This document shows positions 9,609 to 63,243 of a stretch of DNA of 64,000 nucleotides, piece after piece. Every line of letters starts with the position of its first letter. Within the stretch, counting starts at the first letter, position 1. The position numbers and the translations under genes are program-made. The notes under the pieces were generated by a model, which was given only the letters and a program-made list of their open reading frames with translations, made no database searches and was not told the DNA's origin. Origin of the DNA: Macrostomum lignano (lineage: Eukaryota); contig NIVC01002180.1 of the NCBI GenBank assembly GCA_002269645.1, positions 24,451-88,450 on the forward strand. The letters run 5' to 3'.

Positions 9609-11518
9609 ATGTTCATCATGTCTGACGATGACTACAGCCAGACCTACTGGCCCAAGCTGTCCCAGCTGATTGACCTGCTGTTCACCCAATCTGAGGAGGC
9701 TGAGCGCAGCGCCATCAGCTACGAAGAGATGTACTCTTGCGTCTACAAATGCGTCTGCTCGGCGCGCGGACCCCAGCTAAAAGAGGACCTGATGTCCGCT
9801 GTGCAGGCTCACGTGTGCGCCATGGGCCAGCGAGCTCTGGAGAAGGTGAATCCCATGCGCTTTCGCACTACTGATATTTGAATGTTAATTAGTAGTATGC
9901 GATAGGATTTCTTCTGCCGAAAATATTAAGTATTTTCTACTTAATCGATCCGTTTCCTGTCTGAAATATCTGCCTTAGGGTCGCCCCTTTGGGCCTTAAT
10001 GCCTCATCTGTCTCAAAAAGTACAACATTGGTATTATTATTTGTGTTATAATTGCACATTGCAGCAACACTCGCCAAAGGACTACATTGAAGTCTGTCTG
10101 CGCGCGTTTCTCACATTCAATCAGGCTGCATCGACACTGTTCGCCGTATTCCAATACATGAATAGGGTTATGCTAGCTACTAGCGGAGAGGACTCTCTAA
10201 TGGCCATGTTTAAATCTATCTTTGTTCATCAGTTTGTTTCGCCGCATTTGCATAAGCTAATTGGTGAGATTTCTGTTCGAGTAACTGCTTGAGGGTCTGG
10301 AGAAGGGGAAAGGGGATTCACTGAAACCATCTGTTTGGGTGAATAAGTATCTGAAGACAGTTGTTTAACCGGGGCATCTGATGGTGATACGGATACGGTC
10401 GTAACAGGATCTGTAGGAGAGGCTATCAGTCCCACCTGAGGATCTAGAAGAGATGGCTTCGGTTTAATCTTAGGATCTAGAAGGGATGATAGCAATCCCA
10501 CCTGAGGATCCGGAAGGGATATTAGCAATCCCACCTGAGGATCCGGAAGGGATATTAGCAATCCCACCTGAGGATCCGGAAGGGATATTAGCAATCCCAC
10601 CTGAGGATCCAGAAGGGATATTAGCAATCCCACCTGAGGATCCGGAAGGGATATTAGCAATCCCAACTGAGGATCCAGAAGGGATATTAGCAGTCCCACC
10701 TGTGGATCCAGAAGTGATATTAGAAACCCTACCTGAGGATCTAGAAGTGATATTAGAAACCCTACCTGAGGATCCAGAAGGGATATTAGCAATCCCAACT
10801 GAGGATCCAGAAGGGATATTAGCAATCCCACCTGAGGATCCAGAAGGTATATTAGCAATCCCACCTGAGGATCCAGAAGGGATATTAGCAATCCCAACTA
10901 AGGATCCAGAAGGGATATTAGCAATCCCACCTGTGGATCCAGAAGGGATATTAGCAATCCCACCTGAGGACCCAGAAGGGATATTAGCAATCCCACCTTA
11001 GGATCCATAAGGGATATTAACGGTCCCACACGTGAGGACCCAGTAGGGATATTAACGGTCCCATCTGAGGATCTGGAGGAGACTTTTATTGGCACCCTCG
11101 TATACCCACTCCAGGCCACCTAACAGAGGCTGTCCAGAAGCCGTTCCTGGTCCACCCCGACCGGCTTCGCGCCTGCGTCCAGCAGCTGCACTCGGCCTGT
11201 CCGGAATGCGCCTCGGCCAGTCCACAGCTGTTCGCCAGATTCGTGCCCGGCGTGCTGCCGCCAGCCGAGCTGGAGTCGCTACCAGCCTACGCCGCCGAGG
11301 AGAGCCAGCTGCAGCGGGACCTGCGCCGGCACCCGGGGTTCATTGTCGGCGATCGGGGCAGGAAGCGGCAGGGCTCGCCTGGCGGCCTGGACAATGTCGG
11401 CAACACCGAGGACGACGACAGTATCGGCGGCCCGACGCCGCGTGTCCAACAGCGACTCGTGCAAGCCGTTGAAGATATCGAAGCCCTTGAGGACGGCTTC
11501 CAGCAGCCCATGGTTTGA
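9609..11518 (+). CDS. CACUL1: CDK2-associated and cullin domain-containing protein 1 homologue; exons 9609-9845, 10065-10263, 11115-11518
   Basis: The spliced product DDYSQTYWPKLSQLIDLL..ISYEEMYSCVYKCVC..FQYMNR..PFLVHP..LFARFVPGVLPPAELESLPAYAAEESQLQRDL..GF..GDRGRKR matches the remembered CACUL1 motifs (TYWPKL, SYEQIYSCVYKCVC, FIPNILPP, GFTRGDQSRKR). GT-AG junctions are phase-compatible (0, then 1). An upstream exon is possible because an AG lies 2 nt before the ATG. Confidence 0.9.
10430..11076. repeat. Minisatellite, 33-bp unit GGGATATTAGCAATCCCACCTGAGGATCCAGAA, about 18 copies (CACUL1 intron 2)
   Basis: Direct tandem periodicity. Confidence 0.95.
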
Positions 11519-14491: not shown

Positions 14492-17400
14492 ATGGTGTTG
14501 GACTCGGAAATATGCCCCGAGAAGCAGCAGCAGCAGAAAGAGGTAGAAGAGAAGGCGATGGAGCAGCAGCAGAAACGACAGGCAACTTACACTCGATTTC
14601 TAATTGAAGAGATACTCAAGCCAGAGTTCGGTAGGCCGCCGCCTGCTCATCTGCATCATCAGCTGCCGACTGTAGTGGGGAAGCTGCAACAGCAGGCTGC
14701 AGCCGAGGACAAGGCCAGTCTGTGGCCTGCTTGGATCTACTGCACCCGCTACTCGGACAGGCCGTCATCTGGTGAGCATGGGGGACACTGAGGGACATGT
14801 TGGAGATAGCGGTGACACTGAGGGACATGTTGGAGATAGCGGTGACACTGAGGGACATGTTGGAGATAGCGGTGACACTGAGGGACCTGTTGGAGATATA
14901 GCGGTGACACTGAGGGACCTGTTGGAGATATAGCGGTGACACTGAGGGACATGTTGGAGATATAACGGTGACACTGAGGGACCTGTTGGAGATATAACGG
15001 TGACACTGAGGGACCTGTTGGAGATATAACGGTGACACTGAGGGACCTGTTGGAGATATAGCGGTGACACTGAGGGACCTGTTGGAGATATAGCGGTGAC
15101 ACTGAGGGACCTGTTGGAGATAGATATAACGGTGACACTCAGGGACCAGTTGGAGATATAACGGTGACACTGAGGGACCTGTTGGAGATATAACGGTGAC
15201 ACTGAGGGACCTGTTGGAGATATAACGGTGACACTGAGGGACCTGTTGGAGATATAACGGTGACACTGAGGGACCTGTTGGAGATATAGCGGTGACACTG
15301 AGGGACCTGTTGGAGATATAGCGGTGACACTGAGGGACCTGTTGGAGATATAGCGGTGACACTGAGGGACCTGTTGGAGATATATCGGTGACACTGAGGG
15401 ACCTGTTGGAGATATAACGGTGACACTGAGGGACCTGTTGGAGATATAGCGGTGACACTGAGGGACCTGTTGGAGATATAGCGGTGACACTGAGGGACCT
15501 GTTGGAGATATATCGGTGACACTGAGGGACCTGTTGGAGATATAGCGGTGACACTGAGGGACCTGTTGGAGATATAACGGTGACACTGAGGGACCTGTTG
15601 GAGATATAGCGGTGACACTGAGGGACCTGTTGGAGATATAGCGATGACACTGAGGGACCTGTTGGAGATATAGCGGTGACACTGAGGGACCTGTTGGAGA
15701 TATAGCGGTGACACTGAGGGACCTGTTGGGGATATAGCGGTGACACTGAGGGACCTGTTGGAGATATAGCGGTGACACTGAGGGACCTGTTGGGGATATA
15801 GCGGTGACACTGAGGGACCTGTTGGAGATATAGCGGTGACACTGAGGGACCTGTTGGAGATATAACGGTGACACTGAGGGACCTGTTAGAGATATAGCGG
15901 TGACACTGAGGGACCTGTTGGAGATATAACGGTGACACTGAGGGACCTGTTGGAGATATATCGGTGACACTGAGGGACCTGTTGGAGATATAGCGGTGAC
16001 ACTGAGGGACCTGTTGGAGATATAACGGTGACACTGAGGGACCTGTTGGAGATATAGCGGTGACACTGAGGGACCTGTTGGAGATATAGCGGTGACACTG
16101 AGGGACCTGTTGGAGATATAGCGGTGACACTGAGGGACCTGTTGGGGATATAGCGGTGACACTGAGGGACCTGTTGGAGATATAGCGGTGACACTGAGGG
16201 ACCTGTTGGAGATATAGCGGTGACACTGAGGGACCTGTTGGAGATATAGCGGTGACACTGAGGGACCTGTTGGAGATATAGCGGTGACACTGAGGGACCT
16301 GTTGGGGATATAGCGGTGACACTGAGGGACCTGTTGGAGATATAGCGGTGACACTGAGGGACCTGTTGGAGATATATCGGTGACACTGAGGGACCTGTTG
16401 GAGATATAACGGTGACACTGAGGGACCTGTTGGAGAACGGTGACACTGAGGGACCTGTTGGAGATAGAACGGTGACACTGAGGGACCTGTTGGAGATATA
16501 ACGGTGACACTGAGGGACCTGTTGGAGATATAGCGGTGACTCTGAGGGACCTGTTGGAGATATAACGGTGACACTGAGGGACCTGTTGGAGATATAGCGG
16601 TGACACTGAGGGACCTGTTGGAGATATAACGGTGACACTGAGGGACCTGTTGGAGAACGGTGACACTGAGGGACCTGTTGGAGATATAGCGGTGACACTG
16701 AGGGACCTGTTGGAGATATAGCGGTGACACTGAGGGACCTGTTGGAGAACGGTGACACTGAGGGACCTGTTGGAGATATAACGGTGACACTGAGGGACCT
16801 GTTGGAGATATAACGGTGACACTGAGGGACCTGTTGGAGATATAGCGGTGACACTGAGGGACCTGTTGGAGATATAACGGTGACACTGAGGGACCTGTTG
16901 GAGATATATCGGTGACACTGAGGGACCTGTTGGAGAACGGTGACACTGAGGGACCTGTTGGAGATAGAACGGTGACACTGAGGGACCTGTTGGGGATATA
17001 GCGGTGACACTGAGGGACCTGTTGGGGATATAGCGGTGACACTGAGGGACCTGTTGGGGATATAGCGGTGACACTGAGGGACCTGTTGGGGATATAGCGG
17101 TGACACTGAGGGACCTGTTGGGGATATAGCGGTGACACTGAGGGACCTGTTGGGGATATAGCGGTGACACTGAGGGACCTGTTGGGGATATAGCGGTGAC
17201 ACTGAGGGACCTGTTGGGGATATAGCGGTGACACTGAGGGACCTGTTGGGGATATAGCGGTGACACTGAGGGACCTGTTGGGGATATAGCGGTGACACTG
17301 AGGGACCTGTTGGGGATATAGCGGTGACACTGAACTGACACAAAGTGACGCAAAGAGTCTAATTGCCGATTAAAAAAGTAAATTGCTATTAATAGTAAAA

Positions 17401-22537: not shown

Positions 22538-23673
22538 ATAAAATGCAGATTTACTCGAACTTCGAATTCGAAGTTAGAACTTCATCTGCAGCTCTCATAA
22601 TAACCACTTTTTTTTGTCTCAGATGTTTAGTTTAACGTCGCCAGTTTAGCGGAGACTGAATAAATTTTAACGACACAACAGCCGAACACAAGCATGGAGA
22701 CAGATTAGCATCGGCATCAGCCACCAAGATCTCCACTTATTATCCCGTGTAGGGTTCCCATCTTAAATTAGCCTGGCTTAGCTCTCCATGTGCGTTGCCA
22801 AGCGACCAAGCAAATAGGCGAGGCGCAGCGCCAGCTGAAGCCTTTGCTGACGAATTATTTTGGCCTGCCCTCCATTCCACTATGACGGACGGGCGCCCTT
22901 GAAGTAACGTCAGCTGGCGCGGGGTGGGCCCGGGGGTGGCTCAAACTCATTAGTGACTGATTTACGCGGCGCCCAGCCAGGTAGACAGGGCCAACTGGAA
23001 TCGCCGCCTCGCCCTACCTTCTCTTTCTAATTTTTTAGTTCGGTCTTCCGAGCTTAAGCCCCGATTCTAATAATTATTCCGTCCAGTGTTTGTTTGATTG
23101 CGGGGGCCGCTCGGGGTCGAGAGGATGCGCCGTCCCTGTCACTATCAATTACAGGCGAGGCCGGGGGGGGGGGGCAACTGCAGCTGTCTCTCTCTCTGTG
23201 TGTCTGCAGATCGCCGCGTGAAAGTTAATTGCGCCACATATTTGCATTTGTTTTAGCCCCCCCCCCCCAACAGTAGCGTACCAAAATTCAGGCTTGAAAA
23301 GGCAAATAATTAACTTTTCCAAGCGCTTGTCCGTCTTTGTTTTGCTGCGCTTGAAGCGTGTTTTTGTCGCCTTTGTCAGGCTGTCGCTGCGGTGTGTGTG
23401 TTTCAAATTTTTGTTACCGCCAACGCCTCTCCCCGTGTGCCAGTTGTTCCAGTTGATGAAACTTGCACAAAAGCTGTCCCTATCCGCGTGTCAGACGCTG
23501 GCTTGACGCGCCCTAGTGACCATAAATATTATATTCATAGAGATGGCGGGTTGTTGCCTTTAAGGAAAGTATATTATTATACAATTGCAATGATTGCCAC
23601 ATTAATAGAGTACAATACTGGGACATTCATTATTTGAAATCCCAAGCTGAGGCAATTTAAACCATATAGCTCC

Positions 23674-24018
23674 CTATGGATGAGGCATCTAACATCTCTA
23701 AAGATGAGGCATCTGACATCCCTATAGATGAGGCATCTGACATCCCTAAAGATGAGGCATCTGACATCCCTATAGACGAGGCATTTGACATCCCTATAGA
23801 CGAGGCATTTGACATCCATATAGATGAGACATTTGACATCCCTATAGATGGGGAATCTAACATCTCTATAGATGAGGCATCTGACATCCATTTAGATGAG
23901 GCATCTGACATCTCTATAGATGAGGCATCTGACATCCATTTAGATGAGGCATCTGACATCTCTATAGATGAGGCATCTGACATCTCTATAGATGAGGCAT
24001 CTGACATCCATATAGATG
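23674..24018. repeat. Minisatellite, 24-bp unit CTATAGATGAGGCATCTGACATCC, about 14 copies
   Basis: Direct tandem periodicity. Confidence 0.93.
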
Positions 24019-24673
24019 CGGAATCTGAAATCCCTTAGATCTATTAGATCTGCATGGCTCGGACTCCACAAGCTTAGAAGTTGTTAACCCTAACGGCCAG
24101 TATATGAATAGCAAATCAATGCAGTTTGAAAAAGCAACCGAAAATTTCTCGCAACTCTTCATTTCGTCAAACAGCTTCCTGAAAAATATGGGGAAAGCAG
24201 ACGGGGGGATGCGTAGAATTATGTTATCCGCTTCCGACGTCCCGGCTGAGCTGGGAGAGCGGGAATCAGGGACTCCGACCGCAAGCCCCGGAAGTGGGAG
24301 CTTGTGAAATTGTTTTCCCCCAGAATCCCAAATCAATGCTATCCAACATCGCCTCACACTCACACCCCCTCTCCCTCACTCGGCTGTCCCAGATTTTGGA
24401 CTCGAGTCTGAGCACTGCGGGATAATGGGGCCAATTATTGTGCCAAGTGCAGGAAGAGAGTTAAGCCTAGTATAGAATCCTCTCGGTTTTAGCGCTAATT
24501 TCGACTGCTAGTGAAATAATCAGCCGCGCAACCCGTGGGAGAGGAAATCTAAATGACTTTGTTCTGGCGATGGAGCTGAGTTGGCTCGCTTGCGGCTGAC
24601 CAAACTAATAAGGGGCTCAGTGCATCCAAGGCAGTTTTAGTGAACTAATCACTAGACTAATGGAAGGGTGGAT

Positions 24674-25295
24674 GGATCTATAGACGGAATTAAAGCATCT
24701 ATAGACAAAAATAAGTGACAGATCTGAGGATCTATAGACGAAAATAAGTGACAGATCTGAGGATCTATAGACGAAAATAAGTGACAGATCTAAGTATCTG
24801 TAGACAAAAATGTGACGGATCTAAGTATCTGTAGACAAAAATGTGACAGATCTAAGGATCTATAGACGACAGATCTGAGGATCCATAGACGGAAATAAGT
24901 GAGATCTGAGGATCTATAAACAGAAATAAGGACAGATCTAAGTATCTGTAGACGAAAATAAGTGACAGATCTAAGGATCTATAGACGAAAATAAGTGACA
25001 GACCTGAGGATCTGTAGACGGAAATAAGTGACAGATCTGAGGATCTATAAACGAAAATAAGTGACAGATCTGAGGATCTATAGACAGAAATAAGTGACAG
25101 ATCTAAGGATCTATAGACAGAAATAAGTGACAGATCTAAGGGTCTATAGACGAAAATAAGTGTGACAGACCTGAGGATCTATAGACGAAAATAAGTGTGA
25201 CAGACCTGAGGATCTATAGACGAAAATAAGTGACAGATCTGAGGAACTATAGACGGAAAGAAGTGACAGATCTAAAGATCTATAGACAGAAATAA
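24674..25295. repeat. Minisatellite, about 33-bp unit GATCTATAGACGAAAATAAGTGACAGATCTGAG, about 19 copies
   Basis: Direct tandem periodicity. Confidence 0.93.
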
Positions 25296-26298
25296 GTACC
25301 AGATAAAAAAAGAAAAGAAACAGGTTACTCATAAAACAGAATTTTAGCAGCTTTAGAAAAGCATCAGCAACCAAGATTGAAGTGGACAAACAATTAAAAA
25401 ATGAGCAGTCTTGCACAAATTTCAGATCAGTGTATATTTATTTAAAAGTTAATCAATATGTATACATACGCCTTCTAAATCAGTAAAATGTTCAGCATCA
25501 ACTACTGGGTGCAAAAGTAGGCACTTTCGTTTGTACGATGAGTATTTATAAATTCATACAGGGCTGTATAAGGGTGTTATAGCCAACAGGTCAATGAGTA
25601 AATACATATAATTATTGTTTTTAAAAGTCGAAAAAAACAAATGTAAGGCAAATTGAGAGTTCAGAACCAGATCAAACGGAGAGAGTGTGGCAGACACAAA
25701 ATGCTCAAAAAACAAGTGTAACACACAAGATGTCGCAAAGTTTCTTTCTAAAGCTAATCTTTAAGAAAGCTTGAAAACTTAAACATTAGCACTTTAGGTG
25801 GCTAACGAAGAAAGTAGATTCAAAGAACTACATATTACTGTTAGTAGAGTATTGCTAAAAAAGAGTCTTGAAGATCAGGTTGATGTCAGATTTTAAACGC
25901 TATATAGACCGAATCAATTATATTTTTTTAAATAAGTTTTTTTGTACAGAATTCATAATTAATATTTAAAATTCAAATAAATAAACTGTACATGAGAATT
26001 TTCTTAGATATGGCGCAATCGCGAGTTCGCATGCATTAGATTAAATATATATTACATAAGGCAGCGTATTGCACGCCAAAATCGGGTGCCAGCAAATCCG
26101 ATGCCTGCTGCTACTATGAGTAGAAAACTTGAAAAAAAACAACCAGGATGCAGGATAACTTTTTGTTGAACGTTTCTTTGAAAAAAGGACAAAAAATAAC
26201 AAAAACAGACCTCAAATTTGATTGGAGGATAATTGGAAAAATGAATTCGCACCCAGTTAAATGTATGACCCAATTGCACCATATACTAATAGTTAACC

Positions 26299-28238: not shown

Positions 28239-28356
28239 GGGTCTAGTACTTGTAAAATTTGCAAGTGCATGACACAGAGGATCCGCTCAGTGATGATTGG
28301 CCACGGCCCAGCTCGATTCTTATTTGACAAGACATTTGAGCTCATCTGCACTTGTA

Positions 28357-30785
28357 AGGATTTCTCGGGATGCGGAGGAGTTGGGATCTTCGAGAATTTC
28401 TAAGAGTTGGGATCTTCGAGGATTTCTAAGAGTTGGGATCTTCGAGGATTTCTAAGAGTTGGGATCTTTGAGGATTTTCTAAGAGCTGGGATCTTTGAGG
28501 ATTTTCTAAGAGTTGGGATCTTTGAGGATTTTCTAAGAGTTGATTTTTAAGAGTTGGGATCTTTGAGGATTTCTAAGAGCTGGGATCTTTGAGGATTTCT
28601 AAGAGTTGATTTTTAAGAGTTGGGATCTTCGAGGATTTCTAAGAGTTGGGATCTTCGAGGATTTCTAAGAGTTGGGATCTTTGAGGATTTCTAAGAGCTG
28701 GGATCTTTGAGGATTTCTAAGAGTTGATTTTTAAGAGTTGGGATCTTCGAGGATTTCTAAGAGTTGGGATCTTCGAGGATTTCTAAGAGTTGGGATCTTC
28801 GAGGATTTTCTAAGAGTTGGGATCTTTGAGGATTTTCTAAGAGTTGATTTTTAAGAGTTGGGATCTTTGAGGATTTCTAAGAGCTGGGATCTTTGAGGAT
28901 TTTCTAAGAGTTGGGATCTTTGAGGATTTCTAAGAGTTGAGATCTTTGAGGATTTCTAAGAGTTGGGATCTTTGAGGATTTCTAAGAGTTGATTTTTAAG
29001 AGTTGGGATCTTTGAGGATTTCTAAGAGCTGGGATCTTTGAGGATTTCTAAGAGTTGATTTCTAAGAGTTGGGATCTTTGACGATTTCTAAGAGTTGAGA
29101 TCTTTGAGGATTTCTAAGAGTTGATTTTTAAAAGTTGAGATCTTTGAGGATTTCTAAGAGTTGATTTTTAAGAGTTGAGATCTTTGAGGATTTCTAAGAG
29201 TTGATTTTTAAGAGTTGGGATCTTTGAGGATTTCTAAGAGTTGGGATCTTTGAGGATTTTCTAAGAGTTGATTTTTAAGAGTTGAGATCTTTGAGGATTT
29301 CTAAGAGTTGGGATCTTTGAGGATTTTCTAAGAGTTGATTTTTAAGAGTTGGGATCTTTGAGGATTTCTAAGAGTTGGGATCTTTGAGGATTTTCTAAGA
29401 GTTGATTTTTAAGAGTTGAGATCTTTGAGGATTTCTAAGAGTTGGGATCTTTGAGGATTTTCTAAGAGTTGATTTTTAAGAGTTGGGATCTTTGAGGATT
29501 TCTAAGAGCTGGGATCTTTGAGGATTTCTAAGAGTTGGGATCTTTGAGGATTTCTAAGAGTTGAGATCTTTGAGGATTTCTAAGAGTTGGGATCTTTGAG
29601 GATTTCTAAGAGTTGGGATCTTTGAGGATTTCTAAGAGCTGGGATCTTTGAGGATTTTCTAAGAGTTGGGATCTTTGAGGATTTCTAAGAGTTGAGATCT
29701 TTGAGGATTTCTAAGAGTTGGGATCTTTGAGGATTTCTAAGAGTTGAGATCTTTGAGGATTTCTAAGAGTTGATTTTTAAGAGTTGAGATCTTTGAGGAT
29801 TTCTAAGAGTTGATTTTTAAGAGTTGAGATCTTTGAGGATTTCTAAGAGTTGATTTTTAAGAGTTGGGATCTTTGAGGATTTCTAAGAGTTGGGACCTTT
29901 GAGGATTTTCTAAGAGTTGATTTTTAAGAGTTGAGATCTTTGAGGATTTCTAAGAGTTGGGATCTTTGAGGATTTTCTAAGAGTTGATTTTTAAGAGTTG
30001 GGATCTTTGAGGATTTCTAAGAGCTGGGATCTTCGAGGATTTCTAAGAGTTGGGATCTTCGAGGATTTTCTAAGAGTTGGGATCTTTGAGGATTTTCTAA
30101 GAGTTGATTTTTAAGAGTTGGGATCTTTGAGGATTTCTAAGAGTTGAGATCTTTGAGGATTTCTAAGAGTTGAGATCTTTGAGGATTTCTAAGAGTTGGG
30201 ATCTTTGAGGATTTCTAAGAGTTGGGATCTTTGAGGATTTCTAAGAGCTGGGATCTTTGAGGATTTTCTAAGAGTTGGGATCTTTGAGGATTTCTAAGAG
30301 TTGAGATCTTTGGGGATTTCTAAGAGTTGAGATCTTTGGGGATTTCTAAGAGTTGGGATCTTTGAGGATTTCTAGAGATGTGGAAGAGTTGGGATCTTTG
30401 AGGATTTCTAGAGATGTGGAAGAGTTGGGATCTTTGAGGATTTCTAGAGATGTGGAAGAGTTGGGATCTTTGAGGATTTCTAGAGATGTGGAAGAGTTGG
30501 GATCTTTGAGGATTTCTAGAGATGTGGAAGAGTTGGGATCTTTGAGGATTTCTAGAGATGTGGAAGAGTTGGGATCTTTGAGGATTTCTAGAGATGTGGA
30601 AGAGTTGGGATCTTTGAGGATTTCTAGAGATGTGGAAGAGTTGGGATCTTTGAGGATTTCTAGAGATGTGGAAGAGTTGGGATCTTTGAGGATTTCTAGA
30701 GATGTGGAAGAGTTGGGATCTTTGAGGATTTCTAGAGATGTGGAAGAGTTGGGATCTTTGAGGATTTCTATTGGGATGCAGAGGA
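28357..30785. repeat. Compound satellite: 26-bp GAGTTGGGATCTTTGAGGATTTCTAA plus 14-bp GAGTTGATTTTTAA subunits, then about 12 perfect 36-bp units (30353-30770)
   Basis: Direct tandem periodicity with higher-order blocks. Confidence 0.97.
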
Positions 30786-32602: not shown

Positions 32603-33270
32603 AACAGATTCAGCATCTGGGAGGCTGGCCCAGCAGCTGAGGATCTTGGAGACTGGCCTAGCAGCTGAGGATCTGGGAGGCTGGCCCAGCAACTGAGGAT
32701 CTGGGAAGCTGGCCCAGCAGCTGGGGATCTGGGAGGCTGGCCCAGCAACTGAGGATCTGGGAAACTGGCCCAGCAGCTGAGGATCTGGAAAACTGGCCCA
32801 GCAACTGATGATCTGGGAAACTGGCCCAGCAGCTGAGGATCTGGGAAACTGGCCCAGCAGCTGAGGATCTGGGAAACTGGCCCAGCAGCTGAGGATCTGG
32901 GAAACTGGCCCAGCAGCTGAGGATCTGGGAGGCTGGCCCAGCAGCTGAGGATCTGGGAGACTGGCCCAGCAACTGAGGATCTGGGAAACTGGCCCAGCAA
33001 CTGAGGATCTGGGAAACTGGCCCAGCAACTGATGATCTGGGAGGCTGGCCCAGCAGCTGAGGATCTGGGAGACTGGACCAACAACTGAGGAATGAGGATT
33101 TGAGAGCTGACCCAGCAACTGAAGATCTGAGAGCTGACCCAGCAACTGAAGATCTGAGAGCTGACCCAGCAGCTGAGGATCTGGGAGACTGGTCGAACAG
33201 CTGAGGATCTGGGAGAATGGACAAACAACTGAGGAATGAGGACCTGAGAGTTGATCCAGCAACTGGGGAT
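32603..33270. repeat. Minisatellite, 28-bp unit TGGCCCAGCAGCTGAGGATCTGGGAAAC, about 24 copies
   Basis: Direct tandem periodicity. Confidence 0.95.
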
Positions 33271-33791
33271 CTAGGTGATTGACCCCCAAAGTTCTTCAAG
33301 GCAATATAAAGACACAAATCTGTAATATTTGGCTGCACATTACTAAATAAACATTGCAATGCAGAAATTCAATCACAGCGGAAAAAAAACTAGTAAATTA
33401 AATCAACTGACACAAAGTTCTGATAAATAAGCAATATCTGAGAGTAGGCAGCAGGACAGAAATGATGTATTGGGTATGCAATAAGACTGCAATTGTTTTC
33501 AAAGCTAATAAATGAACAAACAATTTAAAAAAGCTACGGTATAAGGGCACAACAAGTACTCAATAAACCAAAGTGTGCTGGGGATTTCTAACAGAGCAAA
33601 AAAGTTCTACAAAGTTAAACAAAGACAGTTGATAATATATAATATTAAGCAATTCGCAAAAAGAAGCTAAAGGCAAACTTTAAACAATCTGCAACGAATG
33701 AACAGTAATTCTAATACTTAATAACTGGATTGACAACTGGGTTGGCTGGCTGTGCTAAGATTGGGCTGCTACAGCTGCTAGATTTCTATCG

Positions 33792-36954: not shown

Positions 36955-37092
36955 CAAGATGAGAGAGAAGGCAAAAAGAAAAGAGGAAAAAGAAGAGGAG
37001 AAAAGAGGGGAGAGAGGGGAGAGAGAAGAGAAAAGGGAGTAAAGAAGGGAGAAGAGAAGGAAGAGGATAGATAAGAAAAGAGAGAAGATAGG
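36955..37092 (+). repeat. About 135-nt near-pure polypurine (GA) tract
   Basis: Almost only G and A on the + strand. Confidence 0.85.
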
Positions 37093-42534: not shown

Positions 42535-45500
42535 TTACAGCGGACCCTGCATCGGTGGCTGCACGGGCGGCAGGATGTGACCGCCTTTTCGGGACAGCAT
42601 TCCGATCTCCTCTTTGAGCGCGTTGAGCTCCTGAGCCTGGATCTGCACCAGCTGCATCAGTTTCTCAATCTCCTCGATGTCAGCTTCTCTGGCGCCTTGG
42701 TACTCGGAGCCCTGCAAGCGTTTGTACGGTTGCACATGTGAGTCAACAGTCTGCAGTACTGTCTTCAAATAGACTACTGTTTTGTAACTAGAAGTACAGA
42801 GCGGTTTAGGCAGGGAGGCCAATGTACTTTTAGCTGAAGGATCAGGGCGGGTCTACATGTAGGTGGCACCCAAACTGAAGGATCAGGGCGGGTGTACATG
42901 TAGGTGGCACCCAAACTGAAGGATCAGGGCGGGTGTGCATGTAGGTGGCACCCAAACTGAAGGATCATGGCGGGTGTACATGTAGGTGGCACCCAAACTG
43001 AAGGATCAGGGCGGGTGTGCATGTAGGTGGCACCCAAACTGAAGGATCATGGCAGGTGTACATGTAGGTGGCACCCAAACTGAAGGATCAGGGCGAGTGT
43101 ACATGTAGGTGGCACCCAAACTGAAGGATCAGGGCGGGTGTACATGTAGGTGGCACCCAAACTGAAGGATCAGGGCGGGTGTGCATGTAGGTGGCACCCA
43201 AACTGAAGGATCAGGGCGGGTGTACATGTAGGTGGCACCCAAACTGAAGGATCAGGGCGGGTGTACATGTAGGTGGCACCCAAACTGAAGGATCAGGGCG
43301 GGTGTACATGTAGGTGGCACCCAAACTGAAGGATCAGGGCGGGTGTACATGTAGGTGGCACCCAAACTGAAGGATCAGAGCGGGTGTGCATGTAGGTGGC
43401 ACCCAAACTGAAGGATCAGGGCGGGTGTACATGCAGGTGGCACCCAAACTGAAGGATCAGGGCGGGTGTAAATGTAGGTGGCACCCAAACTGAAGGATCA
43501 GGGCGAGTGTACATGTAGGTGGCACCCAAACTGAAGGATCAGGGCGGGTGTACATGTAGGTGGCACCCAAACTGAAGGATCAGGGCGGGTGTACATGTAG
43601 GTGGCACCCAAACTGAAGGATCAGGGCGGGTGTACATGTAGGTGGCACCCAAACTGAAGGATCAGGGCGGGTCTACATGTAGGTGGCACCCAAACTGAAG
43701 GATCAGGGCGGGTGTACATGTAGGTGGCACCCAAACTGAAGGATCAGGGCGAGTGTACATGTAGGTGGCACCCAAACTGAAGGATCAGGGCGGGTGTGCA
43801 TGTAGGTGGCACCCAAACTGAAGGATCAGGGCGAGTGTACATGTAGGTGGCACCCAAACTGAAGGATCAGGGCGGGTGTACATGTAGGTGGCACCCAAAC
43901 TGAAGGATCAGGGCGGGTGTACATGTAGGTGGCACCCAAACTGAAGGATCAGGGAGGTTCAGGATGAAGGTAGCGCTGTGCCATCTCAAAGTCTAGATTT
44001 TTTACTTTTTAATAAATGGAATTCATTTCTAGTAAAACCGCGAAAGACAGAAAAAGTTCACAATCGAATTTCAGAGCAGTGATTTCAGTCTAACTAAAAT
44101 TTCAAAAGACAATCCTCTATCAAATGCAGATGCATGCAATTTCTTTGAAATTGACTTTCAGAGGAGGCTTGAAAAAATACTCAAAAGTTTTATAAAAGGG
44201 TTATAAAATGAACCTCTGGTGAGCGTCTTAATAAACAGAAAGTTACAAAACAAAAAGTGGGGAACTGACAAACTCCAGTTAAAAACTGGGATAGGAAAGA
44301 TTAAAACAAAATAGCTATCAGCCAAATCTGTAGAAGAAACCCACAGATGTCATTGGCAGAGTTGCCTGCAAATTATTCGGACATTATTAATAAATAATTC
44401 GGTAATTGGTATCGAACACAAAATTAGTTTGATAATTTGATATAAGCCATGGGAACGAAATTATTGAGCTACTAAAAACTAGCACTCTACTTCCGATATG
44501 GTTGGTGGATGAAGAAATGTTGGAATTTTTACTATAAGTAGCATGATACGCGCCAGCCAGTTCTCAGCTTACCAAATTCTTTTGCCTGGATTCGATCTGT
44601 TCCTCCAGCTCGAACTGGTCAGTGTACAGCATCAGCATCTGGCTGAGCTTCTTCGTGTTGTCCCGCGTCTGGCTGATGAGCTGGTCCTTGGCCTCGCGGA
44701 TCTTGTCCTGCACAGTGTTTATAAGGTGATAGGGGCTAGTTTTCAAGGTGACTAAATATTAGGAGCCTGAAAATGAGTTCATAAGAACCCTACAATCATG
44801 AGAACCCTACAATCATGAGAACCCTATGATCACGAGAACCCTATGATCATGAAAAGCGTATGATCATGAGAACCCTATGATCATAAGAACCCTATGATCA
44901 TGAGAACCCAATGATCATGGGAACCCAATGATCATGAGAACCCTATGATCATCAGAACCCTACAAGCATGAGAACCCAATGATCATGAGAGCCCTATGAT
45001 CACGAGAACCCTATGGTCATGAGAACCCTATGATCATGAGACCCTATGATCATGAGAACCCTATGATCATGAGACCCTATGATCATGAGAACCCTATGAT
45101 CATGAGAACCCTACGATTATGAAAAGCATGTAAAGATGATAAGGGGTAATTTTTTCTGCTCGATTCACTTACATCCCACTGGTTCATCTCGTCCAGCATT
45201 TTCTCCTGCTGCTCAAACATCTTCACTGTTAGCTCTTCGATCTTCGGATTAACGACAATCTGCTCCAGCTTCTCCATGTCCTCCACTTTGCCAAATTTGT
45301 CGACCATCATCTTGTCGCATTTGACCATCATGTCGTCGATGTGCGCCTGATAAAGTCTGCGGTCTTTGTTCAACTGGATATTCTTCCGCTTGGCATCTTT
45401 CTGCTCTTTGTTCTGCTGGTGCTTCTCCTCCTGCAGCTCGCTAATTCGTCGCTTCAGCTGCAGCAAAGCGGAACGTTCAAATACCAAACAATTTGAAATA

Positions 45501-57500: not shown

Positions 57501-60500
57501 GCGACGGCTCCTCTGGATAATAAGGCTCCCACTGCTGCTCCTCTGCGCGGCGCTTGGCGATCTCCTTCTCCTGCAAGAAGATTTTGACAAATTTTTATGC
57601 AAACGTGTACTCGTTCTCAAAGCGTGAAGTTTAGGTAAGATTTTCTCGTGCGTTGGCCGAAAGCAATGACGAGAAATATGTGACTCCTATAGGGTTGCTT
57701 AGCATCTATCGTAACGCGAGTCTGTTTTGCATCCGACTCTTGCGTCGGGTGATTGGGGCAAATGAAGGTCAAACCCAAATGCGCATAGAGTGGATGAGCG
57801 TCTACACTCTTGTACATATACCTGTACGTACCCGTGTGCTTTCCGTGTGCTCAGGGGTCAGTATACTACTTATCTACTTGATGAGATGTCAAGACTCATT
57901 AGGGGATAACTAAAATGCTGTGGCTCATGGAAAAGGGGGGGTCTTCCTGAAATTCCAAGGGTCAATTGGGAGTTTTTGGCGAGGCCTAGCCAAAGGCAGA
58001 TCAGAGGGACAATTATGGTTAAGCCATGGCTGAAAGTGAGGCTTTTATGCCAAAGCTCACAGGGAATGCTGATATCTTAGTCTAAATAGTTGGCTTTTGG
58101 TTTAAACATCATTTTCCATAGTTTATGCAATAGCAACTGTACAAGGTCGAAAGCTACATGTAGCTTATTAAAAATCTCCTTTCTTTGTTTCCTCCCCAAC
58201 GGAGAGTGCAGATTGCTATAGTAGCGCCTAAAATCATTGCGCCTAGTAGTATACATCTCCGGACTCGAACCCAGGATCTCCGACTTAAGATTTCCGTGCT
58301 ATGACAATCATTAAACTCTCAAAAACATTATTCGATGCTAAACCTCCAATGCTATAGCAAATATCAGAGAAGTAGTGCAAATTCTGTGCATTATCCCCTA
58401 TTTGCACTGTCCTGCTTACTAATGACTTTGCGCATCGCTACGAGTACTGTAGTACATGAGAATACAACACAGAATGAATCGTCGAATCTCGTCGAGTCAA
58501 CACTTTTGAGCACACGTGTAGAGGTCAAGGACTACTCAAGTAGAAGGAAAGGAAACCTCGTTTCTTGAAAAAAATTTAGAGGCAAGTTTTTTTTCAAAAA
58601 AAAATACACCACGGAGATAGGAAGTTTTCATTTTTTCAGCACAAAAATTGCTATTGCTTTCGATAGGAGGCAGACCCAATGCTCATCTTTTGATATGTTG
58701 TGCCTTTCTTATAGCTCTATTGATATTCATAGGAGCTTTTCGTTCAGAAAATTAGGATTCAATGTTAATTTTTTATTCTACGTACATTCCCTGTACCTAC
58801 AAATCATCATAAAAAATGCATGGCTAAGCTCGACTCCATGGTTTTATGAATCTGTTTTATCATCTCTGTTACACATATTGTTGCACAGTCAGCTGAGAGT
58901 GATAAAATAGATTCATCAAAACCAATGAGTTGAGCCCTGCCATTTTAATGGTTTTTCAGGCACAAGACATGTACAAATGTACGAAGAATAAAAAATATCC
59001 AGGACAGAAACGAGGTCTCCTGTCCTACTTGAATAGTCTTTGATAGAGGTGTGCAACAGTGCAACGTTTTACCAACTTTTGACTCTCATTTTGGTACTCA
59101 AGCCGACAGTCTTTTCGTATTTGATTAATTTCCTCTAATTTCCCTCAAGTCGGTAAGTCTTATAAAAATCGCTGAAAATGAACGATAAATTTGATGAAAA
59201 GCGCGCACACAGTGACAGCTTGATTTGAGCCAAGGGTTCGTTAGCTGGAAAAGGTATTCGTGACAAAATTTGAAGTTCACTCTTTATAAAACTCGCACAG
59301 AGTGACTTTGCTTGCAGCTCTTCGTAGCCTTACAACTTTTACAGCCTCCCGAGTTTCCAATTCCTTAATGACGGACTAAAATTGCGGCGCGCATAAAGTT
59401 TTCATGCTTGAGAATCTGTACAAGATAATTAAATAATTAAACTATCAAGGACATACCGTACTAGTAAGTTATTTCTCAACAGTTGCGCTTGCGGTACGAT
59501 TCTAAATATCTATTTGCACTACTTATAAATAAGTAGCTTTATTTCGAATTTCTCGATCTTGACCAATATAGGCTTGCAGAAACTTCTTACGATCTGACGA
59601 ATCCGGCAGGTGTAAAACAACAACACACTCACCTCGTCCTCCACCTCTTTGGCCTGCTCCTCCTCCGTCTGCAGGCCCCGTTCCAGCTTCCTCTTTCGCT
59701 CCTCGGCACGCCGCTTCATCTCCTCGGCCTCCAGGCGGTGGATCTCCTCCAGCTCCTCGGCTCGGCGCAGTTTGGACTTGACGCTGGCGAAGGCGAAGCG
59801 CTGCTTCACGTCGAAGCCAGCCAGCTCGTAGGTGACAGATGCGTCCACTTTGGCCGGGTCCGGACAGTCGAAGTCGCAGACTCGGCCGTCGGTGAAGAAC
59901 ACGCGGACCTGGTCGGGCTGCTGGTCGCTGCCGGAGGACAGCCAGGCCAGCTGGGCTGGGTAGCCTTGGAAACGGATGAAGCCGACCGGAGTGTACTTGC
60001 TGGCCGACACGGAGAAGAAGAAGATGCTGCTCAGCTGCTCCTCGGCGTGGCTGCTCTCGTGCTCAATACCCTACAGCGAGTGAGTTGGTTTCATGAGCAT
60101 TGAATCTTTCATTGAGATTGATTGCATCACAGCCAATAATCTGAGGCTTAATCCTAGTAGCCTGAGGATCTGAGGCTTAATCCTAGTAGCCTGAGGATCT
60201 GAGGCTTAACCCTAGTAGCCTGAGGATCTGAGGCTTAATCCTAGTAGCAATGAGGATCTGAGGCTTAATCCTAGTAGCCTGAGGATCTGAGGCTTAACCC
60301 TAGTAGCCTGAGGATCTGAGGCTTAATCCTAGTAGCCTGAGGATCTGAGGCTTAATCCTAGTAGCCTGAGGATCTGTGGCCTAATCCTAGTAGCCTGAGG
60401 ATCTGAGGCTTAATCCTAGTAGCCTAAGGATCTGTGGCTTAATCCTAGTAGCTTGAGGATCTGTGGCCTAATCCTAGTAGCCTGAGGATCTGAGGCTTAA

Positions 60501-63243
60501 TCCTAGTAGCAATGAGGATCTGAGGCTTAATCCTAGTAGCCTGAGGATCTGAGGCTTAATCCTAGTAGCCTGAGGATCTGAGGCTTAATCCTAGTAGCCT
60601 GAGGATCTGTGGCCTAATCCTAGTAGCCTGAGGATCTGAGGCTTAATCCTAGTAGCCTAAGGATCTGTGGCTTAATCCTAGTAGCTTGAGGATCTGTGGT
60701 CTAATCCTAGTAGCCTGAGGATCTGAGGCTTAATCCTAGTAGCAATGAGGATCTGAGGCTTAATCCTAGTAGCCTGAGGATCTGAGGCTTAATCCTAGTA
60801 GCCTGAGGATCTGAGGCTTAATCCTAGCACCCTGAGGATCTAAGGCTTAATCCTATTAGCAGTACTCACAGCGGTCACCAACATGTCGCCCATCTTGTCC
60901 AGCACAATGTCCACAACCCGGCCAGTGTGCGGCTTGAGCGCATCAACCAGGGTCAGCTCGGCCACCTGCTTGGCCTTCCTAGTCGGATCTGTCTCGGGAT
61001 TCTCGCCGAAGCTGAGCACCCGGAGCACTCCGTCAGCGAAGCCGGCCAAAATTGTCCGACCTTTGGGGTCAACAGTCTGCGGCGCCCAGAGGATCTTGGT
61101 GCCGGATCCACTGAATCGGCTCTCAACCAGGGTCCGCTGGCCACAAAGTCCGTGACTCGAACGCTGCCGTCGGCGCCCAGGGTGGCAACCAGGTAGGACA
61201 GCGGCGAGGCTGCGCAGCCAGCAATAGCGCCGGCGTGGCAAGACAGAAGGCGCTCGGGCGGCTGGGCAGTATGTGAGAATGACAGGTCCAGGCGCCAGAT
61301 GCCGCCGTTCGAGTCCTGCGCCAGCCACTCGCTGGAGCCCTCGTCCTCGGCGGTGGTGGTGGCATCGGCCGGGGTGACCTGCTTGACAATGTGCGCCAGT
61401 CGGACATTGTTGCCAACCTCGTAGGCGTTCATTGGGTCCATCTCGATCAGGCCGGACTCGTCGCCGGCTTCGGCGGTGTCGATCATCTCGAAGTCCCAGG
61501 TCTGGATCAGGCCGTCGATGCGACAGTCATGAGCTCGCCGGCGTCCATCACCACCTGCGTTACGAGATAGAATTCGTCATGCTTGTAACTCTCTGTGCCT
61601 CTGATTATAATTAAAGTATGAAAGAATACTTTTGGAGCTTTGTAAAGAAGCAAAATGAATTCTCATGAACAAAAGGAACTCACCTGAAAAATCGGGCCAT
61701 TATGCGCCGGTCGCTTGCCCTTCTTAGAGATCTCAACCTTGATGAGGCCGCCGTCCCACACCAGCATGTTGCCCCATTCGCAGCCGCTCAGCACTTTACC
61801 GTCTGGCAATTCAACAAAGCCTTCAATATCGGAGATCTCAGTCTTGCCGAACTTGCCAATGGCGCCCTGCAGCTTCAAGCCGGTGAAGGTTGACGCCATC
61901 TTCCAGAATCGGACGTGGCCAGTACCGGCCGTGGTCAGGAAGCCTTCAAGGTCCTGCGACCAAGAGACCGGTAGACGTCCTGGGAGAAGGCCTTGGACCG
62001 CAGCACGGTTCGCTCGCTGAGCCAGTCCCAGATGGTGAGCATGAAGTCTGGCTCGGAGCCAACAGTGGCCAGGTACTTGCCGCTCGGATCGAACTTGCAG
62101 TAGCAGTAGGCTCGCTCCGTGCCCCCGCAGTATACGGTACAGCCGCAGCGAGGGGTATTCGTACACCAGCACGTTTGGCGCCTCGCCCTTCTCGGCCACG
62201 GCGAGGTACCGTCGGGTCGGGTGCACCGACACAAAGCCGACACCGCCGCCGCTAGAGCTGCGCAGAAATGTCTGCCGCTTGGTGGCCAGATTCACCACCT
62301 TGACCAGATTGCCGGCCACAAAGCAGACGTGCTGCTCGTCCAGGATATGCAGATTGTCCCGCTTGGTGCAGTCATAGCCGTAGGAGTAGACCAGCTGGAG
62401 CAGGTCGGCTGGCAGGCCCGAATCCTCCGTGACGCGCGGCTTCGACATAAACTCGCCGACTTCGTAGAAAAAATCTGCCGGAATGGCCGGCTTGTCCTCC
62501 TCGGCCGGCTGGTTGTCCGAGTTTGTCTCGTCGCCGCCTTCGCCTTCGTTGTCGCGCGGCGGATGCGCCTGGCTGGCGTTGACGGCTTTTCGACTTCTTT
62601 ATCCTCGTCTTCAGCCTCGCCCTCGCCTTCAGTCTTCCCTCGCCTTTAGCCTCGCCATCGCCTTCAGCTTCGCCTCACCTTTAGCCTCGCCCTCGCCTTC
62701 AGCTTCGCCTTCTGCCTTGTCATCGGCCTCGCCCTCAGTCTCGACTTTGCCTTCACCTTCGGCTTTCGCTTCGGTTCCATCGGCCATCGCATCCTCTTCG
62801 CCGGTGCGCTCTCTTCGGCGGGTTCCTCTGACTCTCGCTTTGGCTTGCCTCTCGGCTTCGCCGCGATGACCTCCTCCTGCGGCTCCAGGGCCAGCAGTTC
62901 CTCAGCTGGAGCCTCGTCGGACGTTTCTTCCGACTCTTCCTTTGGCGCTGCTTCTTCGCCAGATGGGTTTTTAGCGCTCGCATCAGCAGCGATTTCTTCT
63001 TCTACTGCCAGCTTTTTCGGCAACCTCTACTTCTTCTGCGGCTGTTTCAGAAACCTCTACTTCTTCTGCTTGAGCCTGGTCTGAAGTCTCGGCTGCGTCT
63101 GCTGGGGCGTCGCTTTCTGAATTGGCCGCTTCCGGGGCCGCATCAGATGGAGCTTCCGCTGCCTGCTCAGCGGCGGCGTCAACTTCGGGCTCTGAGCCCT
63201 GAGGATCATTGTCCTCCTGTCTGTCCTCCGCTGTTTCTGACAT
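42535..63243 (-). CDS. CFAP44: Cilia- and flagella-associated protein 44 (WDR52); 15 coding exons: 63243-61684, 61554-60870, 60070-59633, 57570-57067, 56881-56654, 55672-55324, 53573-53236, 52101-51917, 51635-51524, 50134-49730, 48994-48811, 46431-46097, 45559-45173, 44707-44573, 42711-42535. Exons 1-2 carry frameshifts in this sequence.
   Basis: The WD40 region ([89 protein letters not shown]) and the C-terminal coiled coil ending [19 protein letters not shown] match remembered CFAP44. All 14 introns are GT-AG with compatible phases. The N-terminus is acidic and low-complexity. Confidence 0.94.
42833..43953. repeat. Minisatellite, 41-bp unit TGAAGGATCAGGGCGGGTGTACATGTAGGTGGCACCCAAAC, about 27 copies (CFAP44 intron 14)
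   Basis: Direct tandem periodicity. Confidence 0.97.
44784..45121. repeat. Minisatellite, 17-bp unit ATCATGAGAACCCTATG, about 20 copies (CFAP44 intron 13)
   Basis: Direct tandem periodicity. Confidence 0.93.
45612..46050. repeat. Minisatellite, 40-bp unit GGAATTGGAAGGGAGTGAGGTGGGTGTCTCGTTGGGGTTA, about 10 copies (CFAP44 intron 12)
   Basis: Direct tandem periodicity. Confidence 0.93.
48070..48646. repeat. Minisatellite, 21-22-bp unit GCGCCACCGATCCCCATTTCTG, about 27 copies (CFAP44 intron 11)
   Basis: Direct tandem periodicity. Confidence 0.95.
49093..49702. repeat. Minisatellite, 20-bp unit AGTCAGAGACATCTCCAGTC, about 30 copies (CFAP44 intron 10)
   Basis: Direct tandem periodicity. Confidence 0.96.
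52495..53250. repeat. Minisatellite, 27-bp unit CCACCCCTATCTAGGCCACAGAGCCAC, about 27 copies (CFAP44 intron 7)
   Basis: Direct tandem periodicity; the terminal copy overlaps the end of exon 7. Confidence 0.96.
54632..55210. repeat. Minisatellite, 14-bp unit AGACACCAGAGGGT (about 30 near-perfect copies) grading into AGAGGACAGTGGGC (CFAP44 intron 6)
   Basis: Direct tandem periodicity. Confidence 0.96.
55785..56620. repeat. Minisatellite, 49-bp unit GCAGAGGAAGGTATCAGGAGACAGAGCAACTCGTCCAGAGTCACTTCAT, about 16 copies (CFAP44 intron 5)
   Basis: Direct tandem periodicity; the central copies are identical. Confidence 0.97.
58255..58320 (-). other. Degenerate tRNA-like / SINE head in CFAP44 intron 3
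   Basis: The minus strand has a B box GGTTCGAGTCC preceded by a weak A-box-like AGTTTAATGATTG. It does not fold into a convincing cloverleaf by eye. Confidence 0.35.
60138..60860. repeat. Minisatellite, 29-bp unit TGAGGATCTGAGGCTTAATCCTAGTAGCC, about 24 copies (CFAP44 intron 2)
   Basis: Direct tandem periodicity. Confidence 0.97.

What the first reader, a model, noticed from the sequence alone, without database searches (positions are those of the whole stretch)
10430..60860. Unrelated minisatellites share a CTGAGGATCT core
Seen: four arrays with different unit lengths and otherwise unalignable units contain the same 10-mer CTGAGGATC(T/C) on the same strand: the 33-bp array at 10.4-11.1 kb, the 33-bp at 24.7-25.3 kb, the 28-bp at 32.6-33.3 kb and the 29-bp at 60.1-60.9 kb. 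Near variants occur in others: CTGAGGGACC (en intron), CTGAGGAG (22.1 kb), TTGAGGATTT (28.4 kb), CTGAAGGATC (42.8 kb), ATGAGGCATCT (23.7 kb) and ATGAGGGC (35.0 kb). GATC lies in 8 of about 23 units, against roughly 2-3 expected for 30-bp units. Inference: a sequence-specific process seeds or amplifies these arrays, such as a break or recombination hotspot motif, a DNA-binding protein site, or a shared donor element. It would be analogous to the classical vertebrate minisatellite core but with a different motif.
Basis: partly seen in the sequence, partly recalled or inferred. Interest (0 to 1): 0.7.

Follow-up and report, generated by a model that had tools for sequence, protein, structure and literature searches.

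The report
Flatworm minisatellites sharing one short box
Four otherwise dissimilar tandem-repeat arrays in a 64-kb stretch of the flatworm Macrostomum lignano share the same 9-10-base box, and each array begins and ends within that box, which suggests that DNA is broken and rejoined there when such arrays form or spread.

Summary
The central observation holds. CTGAGGATC(T/C) occurs 54 times, always on the + strand, and only in the four named arrays. A 9-mer shared by 4 of 24 independent repeat units was never seen in shuffled or Markov-simulated units.

The secondary claims are weaker. The GATC excess comes entirely from the four arrays. Near-variants in other arrays are only marginally enriched (5 of 20 units against 1.6 expected, P about 0.02).

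The window is Macrostomum lignano (assembly Mlig_3_7). Minisatellites make up 26% of it and fill introns.

Outside the box the four units cannot be aligned significantly. The array flanks are unrelated, and there are no dispersed unit copies or transposon hallmarks. Single-strand hairpins are not favoured, and the box is not clearly better conserved within arrays than the rest of the unit.

One new result: all eight array ends, as called by Tandem Repeats Finder, fall inside the box. Each array starts at (AGG)ATCT and stops just before a would-be CTGAGG.

My best reading is that the box is a break-and-join point for founding or moving arrays. The closest parallel is the conserved boxes at monomer junctions in Meloidogyne satellites. 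My confidence is modest. A genome-wide test could not be run here.

The parts
10406..11097 (+). Array A1. The 33-bp unit is CTGAGGATCCAGAAGGGATATTAGCAATCCCAC, in about 21 copies. Central units read GGATCC. The degenerate edge units read GGATCT and resemble the other arrays more closely. The array lies in an inferred intron of a + strand gene with weak cullin similarity.
24676..25304 (+). Array A2. The 33-bp unit is CTGAGGATCTATAGACGAAAATAAGTGACAGAT, in about 19 copies with many length variants. It starts at ATCT and ends at ...CAGAT, just before a would-be CTGAGG.
32615..33290 (+). Array A3. The 28-bp unit is CTGAGGATCTGGGAG(A/G)CTGGCCCAGCAG, in about 24 copies. It starts at ATCT. Its degenerate right edge is identical in the paralogous contig.
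60139..60860 (+). Array A4. The 29-bp unit is CTGAGGATCTGAGGCTTAATCCTAGTAGC, in 24.8 copies with a 233-bp higher-order period. Both edges are sharp: it starts at ATCT and ends at ...TTAGC. It lies in an intron of the - strand Cfap43-like gene, 9 nt from that intron's 5' splice site.
14784..17333 (+). Near-box array in the engrailed intron. The 32-bp unit contains CTGAGGGACCT (edit distance 2), in 80 copies. The array starts 12 nt after the 5' splice site.
23671..24040 (+). Near-box array. The 24-bp unit contains TGAGGCATCT. It lies about 640 bp from A2 and shares ATCTGA..ATC..TATAGA with it.
28378..30770 (+). Near-box compound array. The 26-bp unit contains TTGAGGATTT. It runs into a perfectly homogeneous 36-bp derivative.
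33927..34202 (+). Near-box array. The 24-bp unit contains CTGGGACCT. It lies in intron 2 of the Kelch gene and has 11.5 copies here against 37.5 in the paralogous locus.
42834..43954 (+). Near-box array. The 41-bp unit begins with CTGAAGGATC. It has 27.3 copies here against 12.3 in the paralogous locus.

Best explanation
The 9-10-nt box CTGAGG|ATC(T) marks where DNA is broken and rejoined when these minisatellites are founded, moved or rebuilt. In all four arrays the structure is: flank, then ATCT-y, then (CTGAGG-ATCT-y) repeated n times, then flank. The hexamer CTGAGG therefore occurs only between units, never at the outer edges.

That layout is what a multimer would look like if it were opened on both sides of CTGAGG, for example by a staggered cut in a circular or rolling-circle intermediate, or by template switching at the box. 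The loose ends would then be trimmed by 0-3 nt and joined into unrelated DNA. The variable part y can differ completely between arrays while the box persists, because arrays that keep the box remain substrates of the process.

Shown: the box is shared, it is strand-specific, the array ends coincide with it, and there is no transposon or flank homology.

Inferred: that cutting and joining happen at the box, the kind of intermediate, and whether the four arrays arose independently or descend from one array that spread.
For: The box is shared by 4 of 24 units, which no shuffled or Markov-simulated set reached. All 54 copies are on one strand.

All 8 TRF-defined array ends lie within the box interval. 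Read by eye, the arrays begin at AGGATCT or ATCT and end immediately before a would-be CTGAGG. If the ends are independent, chance is about 3e-4. If each array's two ends count as one event, it is about 0.015.

The flanks of the four arrays are unrelated: 48 comparisons gave a best z of 2.5, and the self-BLAST found nothing. No solo or dispersed copies of the units exist in the window. The non-box parts are not significantly alignable.

Edge units of A1 carry GGATCT and the extension ATCTG..GGAG seen in A3 and A4, whereas central units read GGATCC. The box is therefore ancestral in A1.

The box region is prone to small internal duplications: CTGAGGATCTGAGG in A4 and CTGAGGAATGAGGA in A3 edge units.

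There is a precedent. Conserved boxes are obligatory parts of monomer junctions in Meloidogyne satellites that are otherwise only 32-64% identical (PMC3694981).
Against: The sample is four arrays in one 64-kb window, and the phase analysis was made after seeing the data. An array's two ends are not independent when copy numbers are near-integer, so the true significance may be only about 0.015.

The five near-box arrays show no excess of ends exactly inside their box: 3 of 10 ends, about as expected.

No enzyme, dyad symmetry or target-site duplication points to a particular recombinase or nuclease. Flanking direct repeats are only marginally enriched. The box does not sit in a favoured single-strand hairpin (z from 0 to -2).

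No empty site was available to show whether arrays were inserted or grew in place. The only paralogous locus reached carries the same arrays.
Confidence: 0.38

Rival explanations
1. Plain common descent. The four arrays, and perhaps the near-box ones, are old, strongly diverged copies of one minisatellite family. The box is simply the least-diverged stretch, and the array-end phase was inherited from the ancestor.
For: Unit lengths are similar (28-33 bp), the orientation is the same, and the arrays cluster within 50 kb. A3 and A4 can be aligned along the whole unit, and the similarity extends to CTGAGGATCTG(G)GAGGCT (P = 0.004 uncorrected). A1 edge units resemble A3 and A4 more than the A1 consensus does (P about 0.01 against shuffles). 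The adjacent 23.7-kb array and A2 share segments beyond the box.
Against: No pair of units aligns significantly over its full length once 276 comparisons are allowed for (best z 2.9). Residual similarity is not significant against real unrelated units from the same window (P 0.08-0.38). Ten identical bases next to about 20 randomised ones still require a constraint on the box. The flanks are unrelated and lie in different genes, so some flank-free way of moving arrays is still needed.
Confidence: 0.25
2. Ectopic patch transfer. Stalled replication or repair in one array switched template to a neighbouring array and copied a 10-17-nt patch. Concerted evolution then spread the patch through the recipient array.
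For: All four arrays are in direct orientation within 50 kb. The length of shared sequence differs by pair: 9-10 nt in most pairs, about 17 nt between A3 and A4. Arrays change copy number quickly, as the paralogous locus shows.
Against: It does not explain why the patch sits exactly at both ends of every array. It also does not explain why the oldest-looking edge units of A1 already carry the box.
Confidence: 0.12
3. Functional binding site. The box is bound by a protein, or by an RNA-binding factor in intronic transcripts, and is kept by selection in arrays of different origin.
For: Conserved boxes in otherwise divergent tandem repeats are associated with a protein in other systems, for example CenH3 with the 19-bp box repeats in Meloidogyne (PMC8097292). 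In A3 the box varies less than the rest of the unit (0.043 against 0.14).
Against: In A1, A2 and A4 the box varies about as much as the rest of the unit. An RNA-level role is unlikely, because A1 is on the sense strand of its inferred host gene and A4 on the antisense strand of its host gene. A binding role does not explain the coincidence with the array ends.
Confidence: 0.1
4. Chance combined with shared purine-rich composition on the + strand.
For: Under a pooled strand-specific Markov model, the general excess of same-strand similarity among units largely disappears. The near-variants are only marginal.
Against: A 9-mer in 4 of 24 units was never reached in 1500 Markov or 2000 shuffled sets.
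Confidence: 0.04

Closest known systems
Conserved boxes in Meloidogyne satellite DNAs: Box 1 (CENP-B box-like), Box 2 and the 19-bp box (PMC3694981, PMC8097292)
   Same: Tandem repeats with low overall identity (32-64%) share a short conserved box. Transitions and junctions between monomer types fall exactly at the box, and cut-and-paste or illegitimate recombination at the box was proposed. Here the units are unalignable outside a 9-10-nt box, and all array ends fall in it.
   Different: This case has minisatellite-sized units (28-33 bp), not monomers long enough to carry 17-20-bp boxes. The arrays lie in euchromatic introns and intergenic DNA of a flatworm, not at centromeres. The box is shorter with an unrelated sequence, no dyad symmetry or hairpin was found, and no protein association is known.
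Classical vertebrate minisatellite core (Jeffreys' G-rich, chi-like core GGGCAGGAXG; from my own knowledge)
   Same: A roughly 10-nt core is shared by hypervariable arrays with different unit lengths at different loci and is thought to promote recombination. Copy number is highly variable here too.
   Different: The sequence differs and is not G-rich. Here the core is locked to the unit junction and the array ends, which is not a defining trait of the vertebrate core. No link to meiotic hotspots could be tested.
Transposon-derived minisatellites (arrays inside or at the ends of MITEs, Helitrons and other elements; from my own knowledge)
   Same: Many unrelated loci carry arrays that share a sequence derived from the element.
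   Different: No shared flanks, terminal repeats, target-site duplications or solo copies were found.

Membership tests
Conserved-box tandem-repeat library (Meloidogyne type) | Repeat units of low mutual identity share one short conserved box | tested here: met
   A 9-mer occurs in 4 of 24 units, against 0 of 1500 null sets. The non-box parts are not significantly alignable.
Conserved-box tandem-repeat library (Meloidogyne type) | The box lies at junctions or transitions of arrays | tested here: met
   All 8 TRF array ends lie inside the box (sequences). Transitions between different repeat types could not be tested because no mixed arrays are present.
Conserved-box tandem-repeat library (Meloidogyne type) | Association with the centromeric histone or a CENP-B-like protein | not testable with these tools
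   This needs ChIP or cytology. By inspection the box has no resemblance to the 17-bp CENP-B box.
Classical minisatellite core family | Core sequence of the GGGCAGGAXG (chi-like, G-rich) type | tested here: not met
   The box is CTGAGGATCT, and the GC skew of the four units is only 0 to 0.33.
Classical minisatellite core family | Hypervariable copy number | tested here: inconclusive
   Seven other arrays differ up to three-fold in copy number between the two paralogous loci. For the four box arrays only the right edge of A3 was available in the paralogue.
Classical minisatellite core family | Association with recombination hotspots | not testable with these tools
   No recombination map or population data were available here.
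Transposon-borne minisatellites | Homologous flanks or terminal repeats around the different arrays | tested here: not met
   48 comparisons of 150-nt flanks gave a best z of 2.5. The self-BLAST found no flank matches.
Transposon-borne minisatellites | Target-site duplications, and solo or dispersed copies of the unit | tested here: not met
   The four arrays have no consistent flanking direct repeats. One 7-mer lies 5-6 nt from the edges of A4. Window-wide enrichment of such repeats is marginal. No dispersed copies of their units were found.

The most novel reading that the evidence does not exclude
Macrostomum lignano has a sequence-specific break-and-join activity, for example a domesticated recombinase, transposase or nuclease that cuts on both sides of CTGAGG. 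This activity founds and relocates minisatellites genome-wide and would help explain why tandem repeats fill its introns and make up about 15% of its genome.
Probability: 0.12. Interest if true: 0.8.

Novelty: new member of a known kind. Interest (0 to 1): 0.42.

Why it matters
Simple and tandem repeats make up about 15% of the M. lignano genome (PMC5730564). In this window minisatellites are 26% of the DNA and fill whole introns. What generates them is unknown.

A short box that is shared by unrelated units and coincides with array ends would give a concrete handle on that process. It defines a motif to search genome-wide, to look for at the junctions of circular DNA, and to use as bait for a binding or cutting protein.

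It would also extend the 'conserved box at repeat junctions' idea from nematode centromeric satellites to euchromatic minisatellites in another phylum.

If the genome-wide test fails, this is a local family of four related arrays and of little wider interest.

Tried and rejected
1. Transposon or donor element. A self-BLAST of the window, sensitive flank alignments and a search for solo units found nothing for the four arrays.

2. Target-site duplications. Flanking direct repeats of 6-7 nt are only marginally enriched, and some are degenerate repeat units.

3. Hairpin or slippage structure at the box. Folding unit dimers as single-stranded DNA gave z-scores of -2.05, -1.09, 0.00 and -0.86.

4. 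Selective constraint within arrays. The box is not clearly less variable than the rest of the unit, except in A3.

5. A general network of same-strand homology among all arrays. 19 of the 20 best pairs were same-strand under simple shuffles. This largely vanished under a strand-specific Markov null and in full-length circular alignments.

6. G-rich strand polarity of arrays. The count is 15 against 8, which is not significant.

7. Relatives elsewhere. The protein searches gave only anonymous, distant contigs without the motif.

8. Rfam. No RNA family matched in the window.

9. Literature. There is no paper on the motif or on Macrostomum satellites in the held library. The 2015 genome paper is not held.

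10. Extending the paralogous contig towards A2 and A1.

11. Young tandem duplications. Between the two paralogous loci nearly all indels lie inside existing arrays, so no newborn arrays were available to inspect.

Full report
**What the window is**

An exact look-up of the 293-aa open reading frame at 40736-41617 places the window on contig NIVC01002180.1 of assembly GCA_002269645.1. The cluster partner of that protein is named as a Macrostomum lignano protein. NIVC is the accession of the Mlig_3_7 assembly of this free-living flatworm. The assembly paper reports that simple and tandem repeats make up 15% of the genome and that large parts are present as near-identical duplicates (PMC5730564).

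The window carries these genes:
- Engrailed: the EH2 exon ends at about 14770, and the homeobox is split over exons near 19.1 and 20.0 kb.
- A gene with weak cullin similarity around 9.6-11.5 kb.
- A Kelch gene at 33.8-36.3 kb on the - strand.
- A long Cfap43-like gene on the - strand from 42.5 kb to about 62.6 kb.

Tandem Repeats Finder finds about 26 minisatellite arrays with 24 independent unit types. Together they cover 26% of the window.

**Checking the observation**

CTGAGGATC(T/C) occurs 54 times, against 0.34 expected.

I tested the sharing on the 24 independent consensus units, treated as circles. A 9-mer present in four units never appeared in 2000 unit-wise shuffles. It also never appeared in 1500 sets drawn from a first-order Markov model that keeps the strand-specific dinucleotide make-up of the real units. 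The central observation is therefore real and not due to composition.

Two supporting claims are weaker:
- GATC is in 8 of 24 units as stated, but the composition-aware expectation is 4.9. Outside the four arrays it is in 4 of 20 units against 3.9 expected.
- The listed near-variants exist. Five of the other 20 units lie within edit distance 2 of the core on the + strand, against 1.64 expected (P about 0.02), and none on the - strand. That is suggestive and no more.

**Are the four arrays plain homologues?**

I anchored the units at the box and aligned the remainders. With consensus units the summed similarity is not above controls. P is 0.14 against shuffles and 0.38 against pieces of unrelated arrays from the same window. 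Pairwise, only A3 against A4 stands out (P = 0.004 uncorrected), because the identity runs on as CTGAGGATCTG(G)GAGGCT.

The degenerate edge units of A1 read GGATCT instead of the central GGATCC. They are somewhat closer to A3 and A4 (P about 0.01 against shuffles, 0.08-0.2 against real units). Full-length circular alignment of all 276 unit pairs gives a best z of 2.9, which is what that many tests would produce by chance.

Under simple shuffles there was an apparent excess of same-strand similarity among all arrays (19 of the 20 best pairs). It largely disappears under the Markov null. So descent from one family cannot be shown. With units this short it cannot be excluded either.

**Is a mobile element involved?**

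The evidence is against it:
- A self-BLAST of the window shows almost no dispersed repeats, and none next to these arrays.
- Sensitive alignment of 150-nt flanks in both orientations gives nothing beyond chance.
- The units have no solo copies elsewhere in the window.
- Direct repeats flanking arrays are only marginally enriched window-wide, and they are not consistent for the four arrays.

**A new result: the box sits at the array ends**

TRF phases its consensus at the first base of an array. Three of the four arrays are reported as ATCT....CTGAGG. Read base by base:
- A2, A3 and A4 begin at ATCT, directly after unrelated flank. A1 begins at AGGATCT.
- All four arrays stop immediately before the position where the next CTGAGG would start, and the flank there does not resemble CTGAGG.

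The layout is therefore: flank, ATCT-y, (CTGAGG-ATCT-y) repeated n times, flank. The hexamer occurs only between units.

As an objective measure I took TRF's own start and end coordinates. By that measure all eight ends fall inside the 10-nt box interval. If ends are independent, chance is about 3e-4. If the two ends of an array count as one event, it is about 0.015. I made this analysis after seeing the pattern, and it rests on four arrays. The five near-box arrays show no such excess (3 of 10 ends).

**Other properties**

- Within arrays the box is not clearly more conserved than the rest of the unit. Variant frequencies for box against rest are 0.085/0.100 (A1), 0.094/0.120 (A2), 0.043/0.140 (A3) and 0.029/0.037 (A4).
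- Unit dimers do not fold better than shuffles as single-stranded DNA.
- A1 lies in an inferred + strand gene and A4 in a - strand gene, so the box is read in opposite senses in the two transcripts. This argues for a role at the DNA level rather than the RNA level.
- The box region tends to duplicate itself locally: CTGAGGATCTGAGG in A4 and CTGAGGAATGAGGA in A3 edge units.

**Evidence from a second copy of the locus**

The 293-aa protein has a near-identical paralogue on contig NIVC01002890.1. That 21-kb locus is 97.7% identical to window 30.7-51.6 kb in alignable columns. It carries the same seven arrays with the same units, but copy numbers differ up to three-fold: 11.5 against 37.5, 27.3 against 12.3, and 20.4 against 41.3. 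It also carries the identical degenerate right edge of A3.

So the arrays predate this duplication and keep their unit sequence while changing length. Nearly all indels between the copies lie inside arrays. No empty site and no newborn array was available.

**Interpretation**

Chance is excluded for the exact box. A transposon donor is not supported. A selected binding site is possible, but it explains neither the end phase nor the ordinary variability of the box.

Patch transfer between neighbouring arrays would explain the sharing and the common orientation. It would not explain why the patch marks both ends of every array.

Plain descent from one family still needs two things: a constraint on the box, and a way to move arrays without their flanks.

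The explanation that covers most of the facts is that the box is where DNA is cut and rejoined when arrays are founded, moved or rebuilt. A multimer opened on both sides of CTGAGG, with its ends trimmed before joining, would give exactly the observed layout. This is inference. No enzyme or intermediate is shown.

I put it at about 0.38, plain descent at 0.25, patch transfer at 0.12, a binding function at 0.10 and chance at 0.04. The rest stays unassigned.

**Comparison with what is known**

The nearest described case is in root-knot nematodes. Satellites that are only 32-64% identical share conserved boxes, transitions between monomer types lie exactly at the boxes, and cut-and-paste or illegitimate recombination at the box was proposed (PMC3694981). 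A 19-bp box shared by otherwise divergent repeats there is associated with the centromeric histone (PMC8097292).

The classical vertebrate minisatellite core is similar in concept. Its sequence differs and it is not tied to array ends (my own knowledge).

The present case fits this known kind. Its box has a new sequence, it is in a new phylum, and it involves intronic minisatellites rather than centromeric satellites.

**Limits**

Everything rests on one 64-kb window plus a paralogous 21 kb. Neither the frequency of the box among the many thousands of M. lignano arrays nor the generality of the end phase could be measured here. Those measurements decide whether this is a genome-wide mechanism or a local quartet of related arrays.

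Noticed in passing
window 33792-36262 (- strand), arrays at 35031-35610 and 33927-34202: Minisatellites make up most of two introns of the Kelch gene. With canonical GTGAGT...CAG splice sites that reproduce the annotated 482-aa product, intron 1 is 621 nt, of which 580 nt are the 8/24-bp array. That array ends 5 nt before the 3' splice site. Intron 2 is 401 nt, of which 276 nt are array. The engrailed-intron array likewise starts 12 nt after the 5' splice site, and A4 lies 9 nt from a 5' splice site.
   Followed up: partly
L125 (NIVC01002890.1) against window 30736-51617: A second copy of the locus is 97.7% identical and carries the same arrays with up to three-fold different copy numbers. It also has two large insertions (1820 bp and 821 bp) that are absent from the window and are probably mobile elements.
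   Followed up: partly
window 859-1149 and 19498-19849: A dispersed repeat of about 300 bp is present in two copies, matching in three pieces at 85-95% identity. One copy lies in the intron that splits the engrailed homeobox. It is probably a small non-autonomous mobile element.
   Followed up: no
window 41821-41867 against the array at 18526-18845: A solitary copy (85% identical) of the 45-bp unit of the 18.5-kb array lies 23 kb away, outside any array. It is the only array unit in the window that has a dispersed solo copy.
   Followed up: no
window 28378-30770: This is a compound array. A heterogeneous 26-bp repeat (about 80% matches) runs straight into 11.8 perfectly identical copies of a 36-bp derivative, which is the same unit plus GAGATGTGG. 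It looks like a very recent expansion of a new unit variant.
   Followed up: no
window 14456-20100 (+ strand): The engrailed gene has an intron after the EH2 motif, one inside the homeobox (after ...EFEENR), and one right after ...KRAKAKK. A protein search with the first exon found nothing, so the gene may not be among the annotated or indexed proteins.
   Followed up: partly
window 60139-60860: A4 has a higher-order period of 233 bp (8 units). A 30-bp variant unit (...TAGCA ATGAGGATCT) recurs at that period.
   Followed up: no
metagenome loci L006, L019, L021, L037, L048, L050, L080 and others: Many environmental contigs carry pure octamer runs (CTGAGGAT)n, sometimes followed by the reverse-complement motif. 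In several, the runs degrade into TTGAGGAT or CTAAGGAT variants. Their organisms and meaning are unknown, and they are unrelated to the flatworm locus.
   Followed up: no
window 14784-17333 and 33927-34202: The 32-bp engrailed-intron unit and the 24-bp Kelch-intron unit align along most of their length, sharing GGGACCTG and ...GAG..GAGCGG. This hints that arrays 19 kb apart can be related. It is not significant after multiple testing (z 2.3-3.4).
   Followed up: partly
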